DNA of 64,000 nucleotides, taken from the NCBI GenBank assembly GCA_964304625.1, contig OZ199840.1:3547631-3611630 (forward strand), read 5' to 3'. The stretch is from Kudoa neothunni. Taxonomy: Eukaryota; Animalia; Cnidaria. Shown here one piece after another: positions 15,912-63,244 of the stretch. A program made the position numbers and the translations under genes. The notes below the pieces were generated by a model, which did not search any database, had not been told where the DNA came from, and saw only the letters and a program-made list of their open reading frames with translations. Numbering within the stretch: position 1 is the first letter of the stretch; each line of letters begins with the position of its first letter.

Positions 15912-16948
15912 AAAAATAAATATTTTATCTAAAAATGTAAAAATTGCCTATTTTTGTTTTTTTAATAAAACCAAACAAATACGAAAAAAAGATGCGAAAA
16001 AATATAGCGTTAGATTTTTGGACAGAGAAAACCTTTCTAATATTATTCATCGAGCTCCTAAACACAGATTAGGAACAATGTCGCTAGCAACTAAAAATAT
16101 GGAGCTTTCTCATATTTGACAGCTTCTTCTATGGTTTCTATCTTATATGCATTCTCACGGCTATGAATTTTCTTTAAATCTTCTAGCAGTGCTTTGTCGT
16201 CAGCTATCTCTAATGCATTTAAATCGATAATATTATTTTCATTATCTAATAATAATTTTAATCAATAATATAAAACATAATTTTTATAGCTCAAATTTTA
16301 TCACGATATAATGTGTAATATATTAAAAATCGAAAACACCGTAGAATAGTTTTGAGATATTATGGAAAATAATAAAAACCTGTTGTAGATTATAAATATT
16401 AATTAAATTAACGGGGGGTTTTTCCGCCTTTCTAAACGACCATTATATTATTTTACGGCAGCGTGAGTCTATGCAGTGTCTTTGTAAGCGTTATTTTAGG
16501 CAATAATATCTAAAACGAAAAACTGATTATATTTTTTAAACATTTTTTCAATTAAATTAACAGATGTTTGTGCATAAAATACTTTATTCTAATTTATCTT
16601 AAATAGTGCATATTGTATTTCCTAATTTCATACTTATTGAAGGAGAATTTTATGATTTTATATATAAAAAAAGAGAAGAAAATATTTTTCTCTATAAAGA
16701 AATTGTTGCGTTAATAAACACAGTGCAACCTCGGACTTCGACCATAATCTGTTCTTGAAGTGTGTTTCGAATTCCGAATCAATTTTCCTAAGTAAAATAA
16801 TGAAAATTAGTTTAATCCGTACCGCTCATCAAATAAATGACTATTTTTATTCTTATTTATTAAAAAGCAAGCATGTCTTGTGTTAATAACATAACATTAA
16901 CATATAACGAATAAATATTAAAAATAATAGTAAAAATGAGATATACGA

Positions 16949-17079
16949 TGTAAACACAAATTCCGATTTGGGATTCGAACCTGCATTATTAGCATTACAA
17001 GGCCGGTGGTGCCATACCCCTCTGCTCTCGTTCGCACGTATGATTGGTGGATTACCACCTTTATAATCCACATGTTACA
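16949..17079 (-). mobile_element. Solo LTR-like insert (TG...CA) containing a tRNA-derived sequence; TRIM-like
   Basis: The minus strand starts TGTAACA and ends TGTTTACA. It is flanked by TACGA (16944-16948) and TAGGA (17080-17084); the paralogous MITE has a single TAGGA at 63033-63037. Confidence 0.7.
16962..17037 (-). pseudogene. tRNA-like (Thr-TGT-derived) sequence within the solo LTR
   Basis: A-box-like AGCAGAGGGG, anticodon loop CTTGTAA and a perfect B-box GGTTCGAATCC. The acceptor and anticodon stems are degenerate, so it is not a functional tRNA. Confidence 0.65.
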
Positions 17080-17747
17080 TAGGATAAATATTTGTTGGTC
17101 GTCATACGATAGACTATAAAGGGTTTTCTTTCCGATGACGTTCGCACAACTTGATTGAGCGAGTCTCCTTCTACAGTTTCTTTTCATCTCTATTTTTTTG
17201 CTCCAAATGGATTTGTTTTGAACACCCTTTCTATGTGTTCTAACTCAAAAATGCTTCTGACTCAAAATTTTTGGTCGAATTCTGAGGTTGCACACTGTAT
17301 TTTTATTTACAAAATTTGAGTCATATACCGCGCGTTTTCGCTAGTTTACATTATGACTGACCAGGGCTATAAAATCTGGTATTTTAACTCGAAATAAGAT
17401 TATTTATATAATATATATTTTTAGGAATAAGAAAAATAATGCTGATTAAATTTTAAAAGACGATTTACTTTAAATATGGGGTTTAGTGTAAGGCGGTTTT
17501 ATTTAATATACTATACGTATTGAAAAGTCTGACTGAGGTTGTTTTTAAAAATAGAGTTTCATAGAACGTTCCGCGCATTAACACGGCATAATTTATTAGT
17601 TCATTTTCAATTATTTCAAGACGATCTAATACGGGTTAAATACTATTAAAAAATCCACTTAATCCAGAAATAAAAGTTTAACAAGAAAATGCCATCTATC
17701 AAGGTATCAAGATGGCAACATTATATTCAATAAAATGACAAATAATG

Positions 17748-24118: not shown

Positions 24119-25310
24119 ATGCGCTTGCGTGGAATGACCTCGCTTTATCAACCTCTACCAAGGTAGTGTCTTGGTTGCCACATTCATTCAAATTTATTGA
24201 ATTATAGTGATTCTGTTTTTCGTCGAGTTTTCAAGAAGTATTCAGTCAATTGTCAGAGCGAAAATATCGATTTTAGTGAAATAATTGACTTTTCAAAACA
24301 AAATGACATCAAAAACAATTCCAATATATTCAGTGTAGTAGGAGAAAATAACGGCTTTGAATTTGAAGACATTGCGTATCAGGAAATTTTTCAAAATGTA
24401 AAAGATTGGAATATTTACGGGTTTAAAAATCGCCCCGGCTTGTTTGTCATTAGAGATAGTTTGAAACCCATCTCACAATATTATTTTACAATGAGAGCGT
24501 TGACCCATTATTGTCAATCTCCGTATTGGAACAATTACAACAATCATGACTACACGGTTGATGTGGACCACGTTAATACCCCCTTAAAGGGTAATATTTG
24601 GGATGTTGGAAGAATTAGGCATGAAAGCAATAACTACAATGCTGGCTTATTTGATCTTCAGTCAAAATATTTGAAGTGGTCACAGGGGGGCTATTTGTTT
24701 CATCATGATACGCATTCGTACGATATGGAGCCACATGTCCCACTTTGTACCGAGTTGAAGCTCCTCGCATGCTACATATCTTCGGTTTTGAATATCCCCA
24801 ACTGTAACAAGTTTAAACCTGATTCAGTTCTTATCAACTACTATAATGGAAGTGGAGGGATGCTGCCAAAAAGAAAACCTACCATTTTACGACCACATAC
24901 CGATACCTACGAACAAACTATGGATTACCCCATTGTGACATTGTCTACTGGATTGCCGGCTATATTTCTAGTTGGAGGTGACGACCCCAACGATTCATTA
25001 CCACCTACAGGTAATAGTAGTAGTTTGGTTAGACAGATCGCTTATTGATGTAACTTTTGTAGGTGTTTGGTTGAATTCTGGAGATATTTGCATATTGTCT
25101 GGCCCTTCTCGAACAGCCTACCATGCCGTTCCTAGAATTACCTCAGATTCCTCTTCGGTTCCAAATATTGATCAATCAGATACATGCTGCATTCCTTCAT
25201 ACTTTAGTGATGATGATAAGGATACATTTTTAAAATATTTTCAAGATATTAGATTATACATGCAACAATTTAGAATTAACTTTAGTGTAAGACAATTTCT
25301 CTCGCATTAA
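24119..25310 (+). CDS. ALKBH1: AlkB homolog 1, Fe(II)/2OG dioxygenase, 3 exons
   Basis: DSVFRRVFKKY, RPGLFVI, INYY..HTD (HxD), PAIFLVGG, LNSGDICILSGPSRTAYHAVPRI and RINFSVRQ. The start could also be 24134. Confidence 0.92.
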
Positions 25311-32811: not shown

Positions 32812-35186
32812 CCCTTTCGACCCGAATGATGCCATATGGCATCATCAGATTGATGTCGGAATATCTATTCCATTTTTGTATGTATAGTTTAAATCTATCG
32901 CTGCATAAAAATATAACACATGCTTTATTAAATAAATTTTAGAATTTAGAATTTTATGTCGTTTATTCATTACAAAATAGGAAACAAATAGCGTGAACGG
33001 CGTTAACAAATAATAGATTATTGTATCGATATTTACGAAAATAGCGAATTTATATTTTTTATTAAGCAAATAAATTTTAAAAATTAGATCGAATTTTAAA
33101 AATAATGATGTATAGCGGGTCCGGGAGATGAAACAACGAATGATGCCATATGGCATCATTCGGAGCGCATACGATATTGGGTGAAGATTCGGGATGGATG
33201 CCAATTTTGTCGTGAAAAAAACAAAATCAGGTAGAGTAGTAAAACAATTGGTGCTGCTTCCAGACCCTGACAAGTCTGATGCCGAAAATCAATCTGATAA
33301 TGATGAAAACAATATTTCTTCAAGTGACTGCTCCTTGTCTGAAAACGAAAGTGACTCAGAAGAGATCGTCTCAGAGACAGGATGGATTTTTAATGAGTTC
33401 ATCGAAATGCCACAATTAAATGAATCTGAATTATCGTTTAAAGATATTGACAATACCATTATGGATTCATATTCTTATTTTAATCGGTTCTTTACTGATG
33501 AGCTATTTGAGTTGACAACTAATGAAACAAATAAATATTCTTCTGTTTTAAATTCAACATTTAAAACAACGGTTTAAGAAATTCGTTTGCTCATCGGGAT
33601 TTTCATACGTATGCCAATTGTAAAAATGCCAAGGTACAAAAATTATTGGTCGAAAAAGCTGAGCTACAATACTATAGCTGAGCGAATGACCAGAGATAGG
33701 TTCGGGCTACTACTACGGTATCTTCATTTTTGCGATAACAACATCACCGGACCATTCTGGATACGACCGATTTTATAAAATAAAGCCTGTCCTTAATATA
33801 ATAAGACGAGCATGTTTGGAAGTCGGACCTGAGTACAACCAGTCGATTGACGAACAGATGATCCCATTCAAAGGTAAATCAAATTTAAAACGTTACCTTC
33901 CATCAAAACCTACAAAATGGGGTTTCAAAGTTTACACAAGAAACGGCGCAATTGGAATAATCCATGATTTCTTTTTTGATGGTGAGCCTGCAATTATTCC
34001 CCAAACAAGTACTGGGAGAAAATCATCCGATATTGTTTATGAAGCTCTGCGAGACTCTACCCGACAAAACATATCATATATATTACGATGATTATTTCTC
34101 AAGTTTTAGTCTACATGACAAATTGTTAACACGCGGTTATTTCTCAACCTCCACCATCAGAAAAAATCGCATGGATAAATGCCCCTTCAAGGATGACAAA
34201 CATATGAAAAAGTTAGAGCGAGGAAGTTTCGAGTTTGGAATCTACCATTTGAATGGGACCAAAATTAACGTTTTAAGGTGGCTTGATGGGTCTATTGTTA
34301 ACATATCGTCAAGCTATTACTCTGCGTTTCCTCTCTCATCTATACCTAGATTCGACAAGAAAGCAAAGAATATGATAACGATAACCTACCCCAACATGGT
34401 CAAAATGTACAACAAACACATGGGTGGTGTTGATTTATTTGACATGCTAATGGCCTTGTATCGTTCGGACTACAAATCATGCAAATGGTATAACCGAATA
34501 TTTTTTTTGGTGTTTAAATCTGTGCCTTCTAAATGGATGGCTTCTCTACCGAAGGCAATGTAATTTGCTTAGTGTAAAAACCAAACAAATGATGGATATG
34601 CAAGAGTTTTGCATCGAAGTAAGCGAAGACTTGATTTTTTTGGTCAAAATGTCAGCTTAATCCCAAGGAGAGGTCGACCGTCTGCTTCAACTAAGATTTT
34701 AAGTACTCCAATCGTAGTCGCTAGAAGGTATAAAACTAGTGAGAGTGGAATAACCTCTAACGCTCGTTTTGTTGGATATTTTCATTTTCCAAACATGGAT
34801 CAAACCAAAAAAAGGTGCAAATTATGTGGCATGTATTGCAGAACCTTTTGCATTAAATGTAACTTGCATCTATGTCTCAATAGTGGCAGAAATTGTTTTT
34901 TTTTCATATCATACTAAATAAATATTCATTCTTTAATATATAAATTTTAAGTTATTTTGATAAAATCAGTGTTTTTTATATTCGCTTAATATAAACGCAT
35001 GCGTAATGGCAACTATCTTACAATTTGAGTCGCCGAATGATGCCATATGGCATCATGCAGTTATTTGATTATTTATAATACCTTTTAAATCAAAGATCGT
35101 GCATTCCATTTTAATGTTGTATCTAGAAATGATATATAATGGTAAATATTTTTTCTCAATTTTTATTTTTTTTCGGGTCGAAAGGG
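32812..35186 (+). mobile_element. Full-length piggyBac transposon
   Basis: TTAA TSD on both sides, perfect 15-bp TIR CCCTTTCGACCCGAA, and an internal transposase. Confidence 0.96.
33194..34917 (+). pseudogene. piggyBac transposase (PGBD2/3-like), one in-frame stop plus frameshifts
   Basis: SIDEQMIPFKG..PSKPTKWGFK, YYDDYFSS, YNKHMGGVDLFD and a C-terminal Cys-rich domain RCKLC..CIKCNLHLC, spread over five ORF pieces. Confidence 0.93.
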
Positions 35187-62846: not shown

Positions 62847-63244
62847 CAGTGAAACCTGGGATTTCGACCATAACCCATTCTAAAAGTGTGTTCGAACCCC
62901 GAATAATTTTTCCCATGCAAACTAATGAAAATTAGTTATATCCGTGATCGCACATCAAATAAATGATTATATTTATTCTTATTTATGAAAAGACATGCAT
63001 ACTTTGTGTTTATAAAATATAAAAATGAAATATAGGATAAATATTTTGTTGTTGTCATACGATGGATTATAAACGATTCTCTTTCAATGGCGTTCGCACA
63101 ATTTGATTCAGCGACTCTTCCATAATTTCTTTTCTCCTCTGTTTTTGCCCCAACTGGATTTGATCTGAATACCCTTTCTATATGTGCTTGAATTCAAAAG
63201 TGTTTCTGACTCTAAATTTTTGATCGAACTCCAATGTTGCATTG
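62847..63244. mobile_element. pogo/Tigger-like MITE, copy 2 (empty site)
   Basis: TA|CAGTGAAACCTGGGATTTCGACCA ... GATCGAACTCCAATGTTGCATTG|TA; colinear with 16721-17297. Confidence 0.85.

What the first reader, a model, noticed from the sequence alone, without database searches (positions are those of the whole stretch)
16944..17084. 131-bp solo LTR with a built-in tRNA-derived Pol III promoter: candidate new small-RNA-carrying TRIM retroelement
Seen: comparing the two MITE paralogues (16721-17297 and 62847-63244) delimits an insertion at 16949-17079. It has TGTAACA...TGTTTACA inverted ends and a 5-bp duplication (TACGA/TAGGA; a single TAGGA at the empty site 63033-63037). Inside lie an A-box, a Thr-TGT-like anticodon loop and a perfect B-box, and there is no poly-A or simple-repeat tail. 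Established: TG...CA ends with a 4-5 bp TSD indicate LTR integrase activity, and TRIMs with small-RNA genes in their LTRs exist (Cassandra with 5S; Helenus with tRNA, whose animal members I recall making 4-bp TSDs). Inference: this is the solo LTR of a Pol III-driven miniature retrotransposon family, possibly undescribed in this lineage.
Basis: partly seen in the sequence, partly recalled or inferred. Interest (0 to 1): 0.8.

Follow-up and report, generated by a model that had tools for sequence, protein, structure and literature searches.

The report
tRNA-like mini solo LTR inside MITE
The 131-bp insert is a real solo LTR of a miniature, tRNA-like ("Helenus-type") retrotransposon family in what is most likely the fish parasite Kudoa neothunni, but this copy arrived as a passenger inside a DNA-transposon MITE, and its proposed Pol III promoter is untested.

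Summary
Window 16949-17079 interrupts a Tc1/mariner-type MITE. It has TGTAA(A)CA...TGTTACA ends and TACGA/TAGGA flanks, against one TAGGA at the empty paralogue. It carries a perfect B box on the minus strand.

It belongs to a family with 90-108 candidate sites in this 40-Mb genome. Among 28 free copies with clean ends, 12 have perfect 5-bp duplications and 5 have 4/5. None has an A-rich tail.

One two-LTR copy exists (L048). It has a 13-nt primer-binding site for the host tRNA-Leu(AAG), a short purine tract and a 5-bp duplication. Compact Ty3/gypsy-type elements share the LTR end, spacer, primer site and 5-bp duplication, so they are the likely mobilisers. The solo-LTR/TRIM reading is therefore supported.

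Three corrections apply:
- About 23 of 54 copies, this one included, sit at the same site in a TA-flanked MITE and were spread by DNA transposition.
- The tRNA likeness is degenerate: Rfam and default ARAGORN find nothing, and the "Thr" loop is a private mutation of the family's CTTTTAA.
- The kind is already described (Helenus/TRIMp3, Kojima 2024), though not from Cnidaria and not with 5-bp duplications in animals.

Pol III activity is unproven, because the reads gave no test. The scan noted the same family elsewhere in this genome (s1-708395).

The parts
16949..17079 (-). Solo LTR (131 bp) of a Helenus-type TRIM family; the tRNA-like orientation is the minus strand
   Evidence: Insertion delimited against the empty paralogue. 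There are 90-108 candidate family copies at 78-88% identity. Family ends are TGTAACA...TGTTACA.
16944..16948 (.). One copy of the 5-bp target-site duplication (TACGA on +; the other copy differs by one base)
   Evidence: The same TCCTA/TCGTA pair (minus-strand reading) is shared by most of the MITE-embedded copies (the downstream 5-mer varies by one base in a few), so it was inherited from one ancestral insertion.
17080..17084 (.). Second copy of the 5-bp target-site duplication (TAGGA), single at the empty site 63033-63037
16971..16981 (-). Perfect B-box motif GGTTCGAATCC
   Evidence: Read directly. The exact 11-mer is kept in 20 of 44 aligned copies, against a median of 12 for other 11-mers.
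16995..17001 (-). Anticodon-loop-like heptamer CTTGTAA; the family majority is CTTTTAA (UUU, Lys-like, and a T4 run)
17012..17022 (-). Partial A-box-like stretch, about 43 nt upstream of the B box
   Evidence: Read directly. It matches about 5 of the 7 specified positions of TRGCNNANNGG (my reading). The exact motif is poorly kept among free copies.
17047..17071 (-). Conserved 8-bp hairpin near the LTR 5' end
   Evidence: 86-98% of copies keep each pair. This is among the best-conserved parts of the LTR, together with the two termini. Only one compensatory change was seen, so its function is unknown.
16721..17297 (.). Host element: Tc1/mariner-type MITE (CAGTG... terminal inverted repeats, TA flank) that carries the LTR as a passenger
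   Evidence: In 22 loci this composite MITE carries the LTR at the same site; most are near full length (about 480-577 bp) and a few are truncated. Each has its own flanks and most have TA at both ends.
62847..63244 (.). Empty paralogue of the MITE (no LTR); the empty site is at 63033-63037
   Evidence: The MITE family has at least 208 candidate sites, and most of the 40 scored are the empty form.

Best explanation
Window 16949-17079 is a solo LTR of a terminal-repeat retrotransposon in miniature (TRIM). Its roughly 121-137-bp LTRs carry a degenerate tRNA-like segment with a perfect B box, which makes it a Helenus-type (TRIMp3-like) family. [quoted passage not shown] Integration makes exactly 5-bp duplications. 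Almost all copies are now solo LTRs. Inferred: the family is copied by the reverse transcriptase and integrase of compact Ty3/gypsy-type elements of the same genome. Those elements end their LTRs in ...GTTACA, have the same 2-nt spacer and tRNA-Leu(AAG) PBS, and (shown for one related copy) also make 5-bp duplications. Shown: one such LTR landed once in a Tc1/mariner-type MITE. That composite MITE then multiplied by cut-and-paste DNA transposition, and the window copy is one of its descendants, so its TSD was inherited and not made here. Inferred and untested: the A/B-box segment recruits TFIIIC and Pol III and drives the TRIM transcript. It may equally be a relic of a SINE or tRNA insertion into an ancestral LTR.
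For: Family and ends: 90-108 candidate sites; ends are TGTAACA...TGTTACA in nearly all copies, and the termini are the best-conserved columns (0.96-0.97 against a mean of 0.87). TSD: of 28 free copies with clean ends, 12 are perfect 5/5 and 5 are 4/5, against 1.9% and 3.3% with shuffled pairing; the sixth base matches only at chance level. Two-LTR copy at L048:1504-2013(-): LTRs about 83% identical, inner flanks unrelated, outer flanks TCAAA/TTAAA, and the interior ends in GGGGAA. PBS: TGGTGACAGGGGT is the exact complement of the last 10 nt plus CCA of the tRNA-Leu(AAG) gene at L083:1501-1582. Partner: the pattern LTR-end+NN+PBS gives 35 hits against 0 in the control. Fourteen (among them the L048 TRIM itself) have one mismatch; twelve of them read CGTTACA+TC/TT+TGGTGACAGGGG, and at least eleven of those lie 1.8-3.0 kb (six of them about 2.85 kb) upstream of same-strand integrase hits in frames up to 1259 aa. 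None of the 7 copia-type RVT_2 hits lies at these sites. A related 4165-bp element nested in a TRIM LTR has CGGAC on both sides and an H2C2+rve integrase. Hitch-hiking: 22 copies sit at the same site in MITEs with unique flanks and TA ends. Together with L021 they form one group in the LTR tree, nested among free copies (88/90 support). tRNA likeness: a perfect B box, plus relaxed ARAGORN giving 23 cloverleaf calls in 54 copies, mostly on one strand at LTR positions about 50-122, against 0-4 in shuffles. Definition and range of Helenus: PMC10886601.
Against: Only one two-LTR copy was found, and its 250-bp interior is single-copy, so the full-length structure rests on one old element. The tRNA likeness is weak. 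ARAGORN at default settings and Rfam RF00005 detect nothing in 21 copies, and the A box misses the strict TRGCY motif quoted for Helenus. The family's loop holds a T4 run (T5 in the L048 5' LTR), which could stop Pol III about 35 nt after its start. No RNA evidence exists: three RNA runs gave 0 reads and the DNA run gave 1, so this was no test. I could not fetch the tRNA-Leu-primed Gypsy copies, so their LTR 5' ends and TSDs were not read. The 5-bp TSD was shown only for a sister family that has a different PBS. MITE-embedded copies as one clade is not rejected but also not proven (p-AU 0.155 for the 16 rows without L021).
Confidence: 0.8

Rival explanations
1. It is a TRIM solo LTR, but the tRNA-like segment is only a fossil of an old SINE or tRNA insertion. 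The element is transcribed by Pol II or by read-through, so it is Helenus-like in sequence and an ordinary TRIM in function.
For: No tRNA is detected by Rfam or by default ARAGORN. The A box is partial. A T4/T5 run lies between the A and B boxes. The B box is conserved only moderately above the LTR average (0.92 against 0.87), less than the termini and the 5' hairpin.
Against: A perfect 11-nt B box survives in 20 of 44 diverged copies and in all subfamilies. The A-B spacing of about 43 nt is in the working range of type-2 promoters (established knowledge). The 246-bp interior of L048 has no T4 run although the genome is 70% A+T. Real tRNA-Lys(UUU) genes carry the same T4 loop and are still transcribed (established knowledge).
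Confidence: 0.4
2. It is a non-autonomous DNA transposon (MITE) with 7-bp terminal inverted repeats TGTAACA and 5-bp TSDs, for example Transib-like, and not an LTR.
For: The two ends are a perfect 7-bp inverted repeat. The TSD length is fixed. All copies but one pair are single units.
Against: L048 has two direct copies that share one outer TSD, with a 13-nt tRNA-Leu PBS 2 nt after the first copy and a purine tract before the second. The same LTR end, spacer and PBS are found in integrase-coding elements. A nested Gypsy makes the same 5-bp TSD. The ends do not match the Transib CACWATG termini (recalled from memory, not tested).
Confidence: 0.05
3. It is a tRNA-derived SINE mobilised by a non-LTR (LINE) retrotransposon.
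For: It is short and has a tRNA-like internal promoter motif. RLE-type non-LTR elements exist in this genome according to earlier scan notes (unchecked).
Against: There is no A-rich or simple-repeat tail. Both ends are precise in nearly all copies, with no 5' truncation series. The TSD is exactly 5 bp. The tRNA-like part lies in the 3' two thirds, not at the 5' end. A two-LTR copy with a PBS exists.
Confidence: 0.03

Closest known systems
Helenus (TRIM with tRNA-like LTRs; TRIMp3), Kojima 2024, PMC10886601
   Same: It is short and non-coding, with two small LTRs holding A/B-box-like tRNA remnants. The PBS uses a tRNA 3' end (Leu is among the primers reported for animal Helenus). It has a PPT, many solo LTRs with TSDs, no predicted functional tRNA, and a likely Gypsy mobiliser, as proposed for animal Helenus.
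   Different: It makes 5-bp TSDs, where animal Helenus make 4 bp and 5 bp is reported for fungal and plant Helenus linked to Copia. The host lineage (Myxozoa, Cnidaria) is not among the six animal phyla listed. The tRNA likeness is weaker (the strict TRGCY of box A is not met). Only one full-length copy survives. About 40% of the copies examined were spread by a DNA-transposon MITE.
Cassandra / Ajax (TRIMs with 5S rRNA-derived LTR promoters)
   Same: The idea is the same: a small-RNA gene promoter inside TRIM LTRs. Ajax makes 5-bp TSDs (PMC10886601).
   Different: Those carry 5S-type promoters (box A, IE, box C). This element carries a tRNA-type B box. Cassandra is plant-specific and its Pol III transcripts have been shown, which is not the case here.
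Ordinary TRIMs / SMARTs (Pol II-type miniature LTR elements)
   Same: Size, LTR-PBS-PPT-LTR layout, dependence on an autonomous element, and an excess of solo LTRs.
   Different: They lack a small-RNA-derived motif in the LTR.
tRNA-derived SINEs (SINE2)
   Same: A tRNA-like A/B-box segment in a dispersed repeat of about 130 bp.
   Different: SINEs have the tRNA head at the 5' end, a LINE-derived or A-rich tail and variable TSDs. None of these is seen here.

Membership tests
LTR retrotransposon, solo LTR | TG...CA termini with a short inverted repeat | tested here: met
   TGTAACA...TGTTACA in the window copy and in nearly all family copies.
LTR retrotransposon, solo LTR | Fixed-length (4-6 bp) target-site duplication in independent insertions | tested here: met
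   12 perfect and 5 near-perfect 5-bp TSDs among 28 free copies; the sixth base matches only at chance level.
TRIM | Two direct LTRs flanking a short non-coding interior, with a PBS next to the 5' LTR and a PPT next to the 3' LTR | tested here: met
   L048:1504-2013(-) has a 137-bp LTR, a 246-bp interior and a 127-bp LTR. The 13-nt PBS for tRNA-Leu(AAG) starts 2 nt after the LTR, and GGGGAA precedes the 3' LTR. Only one such copy was found.
TRIM | Autonomous partner in the same genome | tested here: inconclusive
   Integrase-coding elements share the LTR end GTTACA, the 2-nt spacer and the tRNA-Leu PBS. A sister Gypsy makes a 5-bp TSD. Their sequences could not be fetched, and mobilisation is untested.
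Helenus / TRIMp3 | tRNA-derived sequence in the LTR, with box B GGTTC conserved | tested here: met
   Perfect GGTTCGAATCC in the window copy. The 7-mer GGTTCGA is kept in 28 of 44 aligned copies and the full 11-mer in 20 of 44. Relaxed ARAGORN cloverleaf calls are enriched, 23 of 54 against 0-4 in shuffles.
Helenus / TRIMp3 | Box A with TRGCY ... YGG (as stated for most Helenus) | tested here: inconclusive
   Only a partial match (xRGC...TGG) about 43 nt upstream of box B. The strict TRGCY is not present. The paper says 'most', not all.
Helenus / TRIMp3 | Similarity to a tRNA or SINE2 by Censor or tRNAscan-SE, the criterion used in the paper | not testable with these tools
   Repbase/Censor and tRNAscan-SE are not available. 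Rfam RF00005 and default ARAGORN find nothing.
Helenus / TRIMp3 | Functional Pol III promoter | not testable with these tools
   The RNA runs under the same species label gave 0 reads and the DNA run gave 1, so there was no test. Pol III function is also unproven for published Helenus (PMC10886601, section 4.1).
Animal Helenus as described | 4-bp TSD | tested here: not met
   The TSD is 5 bp. This differs from the described animal families but is not part of the definition of Helenus.
tRNA-derived SINE | A-rich or simple-repeat 3' tail, variable TSD, 5' tRNA head | tested here: not met

The most novel reading that the evidence does not exclude
This is the first Helenus-type (Pol III-promoter-bearing) TRIM family in Cnidaria/Myxozoa. 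It is primed by tRNA-Leu(AAG) and mobilised by the ultra-compact Gypsy elements of Kudoa with 5-bp duplications. Its B-box-bearing LTR was then spread a second time by a Tc1/mariner MITE. If so, potential TFIIIC/Pol III sites were scattered through a reduced parasite genome by two unrelated transposition mechanisms.
Probability: 0.45. Interest if true: 0.5.

Novelty: new member of a known kind. Interest (0 to 1): 0.4.

Why it matters
It adds a seventh animal phylum to the patchy range of tRNA-bearing TRIMs, provided the genome is Kudoa neothunni, as its size and N50 indicate. It also breaks the reported rule that animal Helenus make 4-bp TSDs and fungal Helenus 5-bp TSDs: TSD length follows the partner's integrase, not the host kingdom. 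It gives an unusually explicit candidate partner that shares the LTR terminus, spacer, PBS and TSD length. It also shows an LTR multiplied by a DNA transposon, a reminder that repeat copy number and 'TSDs' can be inherited second-hand. In practice such LTRs could be mistaken for tRNA pseudogenes or SINEs when myxozoan genomes are annotated. About 45% of this genome is repeats that the genome paper does not classify.

Tried and rejected
(1) tRNA detection: ARAGORN at default settings on the window and on 55 loci, and Rfam at E<=10 on the window copy and on 20 loci, found no tRNA.

(2) Ribozyme: a weak Twister-P5 match on the window copy (13.6 bits against a 37.6 cut-off, E=2.2) did not recur in 20 other copies. 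I rejected it as chance, so this is not a retrozyme-like element.

(3) More full-length copies: the L048 interior is single-copy, and no other locus holds two LTRs within 1.5 kb. The same-strand pair 4.3 kb apart (L066/L074) has identical flanks and the same TSD, so it is a segmental duplication and not two LTRs of one element. The young short subfamily is also all solo.

(4) Copia partner, which a 5-bp TSD would suggest: there are only 7 RVT_2 hits. None lies at the LTR-end+PBS junctions that match the TRIM. One PBS-only site (C1:10765881) has RVT_2 hits about 5 kb away, but on the opposite strand.

(5) TRIM derived from the nested Gypsy by deletion: there is no significant similarity between L048 and the 1.5-kb 3' part of the L077 Gypsy.

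(6) Expression: read laying on window 16600-17400 gave 0 reads in three RNA runs and 1 partial read in a DNA run. This is no test, because the species label is probably the host fish.

I did not try to work around it.

(8) Hairpin covariation: only one compensatory change was seen, so there is no support for a conserved RNA structure.

(9) L039 has a PPT-like GGGGAAT before its LTR, but there is no 5' LTR within 1.5 kb.

Full report
**1. Observation.**
- A 577-bp element at 16721-17297 and its 398-bp paralogue at 62847-63244 are two copies of one repeat with CAGTG... inverted ends.
- The first copy holds an extra 131 bp at 16949-17079.
- The insert begins TGTAAACA and ends TGTTACA.
- It is flanked by TACGA (16944-16948) and TAGGA (17080-17084). 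The uninterrupted paralogue has a single TAGGA at 63033-63037.
- Read on the minus strand, the insert holds a perfect B box (16971-16981), a heptamer CTTGTAA (16995-17001) and a partial A-box-like stretch about 43 nt upstream of the B box.
- It has no A-rich tail.

**2. It is a family.**
Searching the window's own assembly (40,260,978 bases, 4 contigs) with this copy and with three other members gave 90-108 first-look candidates each time. All 40 scored hits were significant, at 78-88% identity. I examined 54 distinct copies with their flanks.

**3. Ends and duplications.**
- Nearly all copies begin TGTAACA and end TGTTACA. These termini are the best-conserved columns (0.96-0.97 majority frequency against a mean of 0.87).
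- Of 28 copies that lie outside the MITE and have clean ends, 12 have a perfect 5-bp duplication and 5 have 4 of 5. With shuffled pairing these classes make up 1.9% and 3.3%.
- The sixth base matches only at chance level, so the duplication is exactly 5 bp.
- No copy has an A-rich or simple-repeat tail, and there is no series of 5' truncations.

**4. A two-LTR element.**
One locus, L048, holds two copies in direct orientation 250 bp apart. On its minus strand the order is as follows:
- flank ...TCAAA;
- LTR;
- TT;
- TGGTGACAGGGGT...;
- about 230 bp of non-coding sequence at 48% G+C, with no T4 or A4 run;
- ...GGGGAA;
- LTR;
- flank TTAAA.

The inner flanks of the two copies do not match each other. 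The outer flanks match at 4 of 5 positions, as expected for one integration of a two-LTR element. The LTRs are about 83% identical, so the insertion is old.

A pattern built from the putative primer-binding site found one perfect tRNA 3' end in the genome. ARAGORN calls it tRNA-Leu(AAG). Its last 10 nt plus CCA are the exact complement of the 13-nt site.

The interior is single-copy, so this is the only full-length element I could find. The rest of the family are solo LTRs, including a younger, shorter subfamily of about 121 bp at 94-96% identity with perfect duplications.

**5. Likely mobiliser.**
- The pattern 'LTR end + NN + PBS' (TGTTACANNTGGTGACAGGGG, up to 3 mismatches) gave 35 hits, against 0 for the reversed control.
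- Fourteen (among them the L048 TRIM itself) have a single mismatch. Twelve of them read CGTTACA, then TC or TT, then the same tRNA-Leu site.
- At least eleven of those twelve lie 1.8-3.0 kb (six of them about 2.85 kb) upstream of same-strand integrase-core (PF00665) matches, inside open frames of up to 1259 aa.
- Copia-type RVT_2 has only 7 hits in the genome, and none lies at these junction sites.
- One related element could be read in part. In L077 a young TRIM LTR is cut by an element beginning TGTAACG on the + strand.
- The predicted far junction was found once in the genome, at the expected distance. It reads Gypsy end, CGGAC, then the rest of the TRIM LTR. That element is therefore 4165 bp long and made a 5-bp duplication.
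- Its last 450 aa hold Integrase_H2C2 plus rve, the Ty3/gypsy type.
- Earlier scan notes describe 3.9-kb 'minimal Gypsy' elements with 86-100-bp LTRs in this genome. I used them as a lead only.
- The genome thus holds compact Gypsy elements that share the TRIM's LTR terminus, spacer and primer. A sister family shares its duplication length.
- Mobilisation in trans is an inference.

**6. How the window copy got here.**
- In 22 of the 54 copies the flanks on both sides are the same sequence, which is the MITE of the window.
- In these loci the MITE is mostly near full length (about 480-577 bp; a few are truncated). Each has its own outer flanks and most have TA next to both CAGTG... ends. This is the signature of Tc1/mariner-type transposition.
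- In all of them the LTR lies at the same MITE position, and most share the same imperfect duplication pair (the downstream 5-mer differs by one base in a few).
- In a maximum-likelihood tree of 44 LTRs these copies, plus L021 (a MITE truncated on one side), form one group. That group is nested among free copies, with support 88/90. Holding the 16 labelled rows together is not rejected (p-AU 0.155).
- The MITE family has at least 208 candidate sites, and most of the 40 scored are the empty form.
- The simplest history is this: a TRIM integrated once into a MITE, was reduced to a solo LTR, and the composite MITE was then multiplied by a DNA transposase.
- The duplication at 16944-16948 and 17080-17084 is therefore inherited. 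It was not made at this locus.

**7. How tRNA-like is it?**
- The B box is perfect.
- The family's loop is CTTTTAA (anticodon UUU if read as a tRNA). The window's 'Thr-TGT' loop is a private T-to-G change.
- ARAGORN at default settings and Rfam's tRNA model find nothing in the window copy or in 20 other copies.
- With ARAGORN's threshold lowered to 80%, 23 cloverleaf calls appear in 54 copies, against 0-4 in five shuffles. Most lie on one strand at LTR positions about 50-122, with inconsistent anticodons.
- The segment is therefore a degenerate tRNA-like remnant. Kojima (PMC10886601) reports the same for most Helenus LTRs, where predictions disagree and no functional tRNA is expected.
- Resemblance of the 3' part to tRNA-Lys(UUU) is only my recollection and was not tested.
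- The T4 run in the loop (T5 in the 5' LTR of L048) could act as a Pol III terminator. This is a caveat for the promoter model, although real tRNA-Lys(UUU) genes carry the same run.

**8. Expression.**
The runs that hold the window are four runs of one sample. Runs under the same species label gave 0 reads (three metatranscriptomic runs) and 1 partial read (a DNA run) on window 16600-17400. This is no test.

**9. Organism.**
- Earlier follow-up notes call this genome a Kudoa.
- The G3 paper on Kudoa genomes recovered from contaminated fish data lists K. neothunni at 40.2 Mb with scaffold N50 12.0 Mb, a near-chromosomal nuclear assembly (Hi-C chromosome map) plus a circular mitochondrial genome, 45.6% repeats and low G+C (PMC12239612).
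- This fits 40,260,978 bases in 4 contigs and about 30% G+C. It also explains why reads labelled with the host species miss it.
- I regard the identification as very likely but did not test it by sequence.
- That paper contains neither 'transposable' nor 'LTR'.

**10. Comparison with what is known.**
- It is reported from fungi, one plant and six animal phyla, not including Cnidaria.
- Animal families make 4-bp duplications and share PBS regions with Gypsy. Fungal families make 5-bp duplications and are linked to Copia.
- Primers include tRNA-Leu. Pol III use is proposed but unproven.
- The present family meets the structural definition, with a weak A box, in a new host lineage. It combines a Gypsy-type partner with 5-bp duplications.
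- 'TRIMp3' occurs in no other relevant paper in the library.
- I file it as a new member of a known kind.
- Its amplification inside a MITE is an unusual detail but not a new principle.

**11. Limits.**
- Copy counts are lower bounds.
- I printed and saved no consensus of the LTR or of the Gypsy elements. A majority string was used only inside one script, to locate motif columns.

Noticed in passing
window 16721-17297 and 62847-63244: Tc1/mariner-type MITE family (TA | CAGTG... ends, about 400-580 bp) with at least 208 candidate sites in the genome. One subfamily carries the LTR plus a 37-bp extra A+T-rich stretch.
   Followed up: partly
L077:1611-3106 (G000:C1:4969953-4974117): A 4165-bp Ty3/gypsy-type element with roughly 116-bp LTRs and an open frame that ends a few bases from the purine tract. 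It is nested in a young TRIM LTR and has a perfect 5-bp TSD, CGGAC.
   Followed up: partly
G000 C1:3345018, C1:5671964, C2:5296028, C2:2171505 and about 10 more: A compact LTR element family whose PBS for tRNA-Leu(AAG) lies about 2.86 kb upstream of the integrase core, in single frames of up to 1259 aa. This is probably the 'minimal Gypsy' of earlier scan notes.
   Followed up: partly
window 33194-34563 (+): ORFs that look like a piggyBac-type transposase (DDE_Tnp_1_7-like motif). This was judged by eye only.
   Followed up: no
window 24197-25310 (+): A 2OG-Fe(II) oxygenase (AlkB-like) gene in two overlapping frames. The protein atlas places it with PF13532 clusters.
   Followed up: partly
L066/L074 (C1:14020380 and 14024679), L014/L015 (C3:8381363 and 8409449), L019/L020 (C1:8996936 and 9046432), L034/L035 (C3:9792960 and 9837791): Pairs of LTR copies with identical flanks lying 4-50 kb apart. 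These are local segmental duplications, or uncollapsed haplotypes in the assembly.
   Followed up: no
window 16968-17026 (-): A weak Rfam Twister-P5 match (13.6 bits, E 2.2) over the tRNA-like segment. It is absent from 20 other copies, so I take it as chance.
   Followed up: yes
L039:1490-1500: A free LTR preceded by a PPT-like GGGGAAT, without a matching TSD and without a 5' LTR within 1.5 kb. It may be a truncated full-length element.
   Followed up: partly
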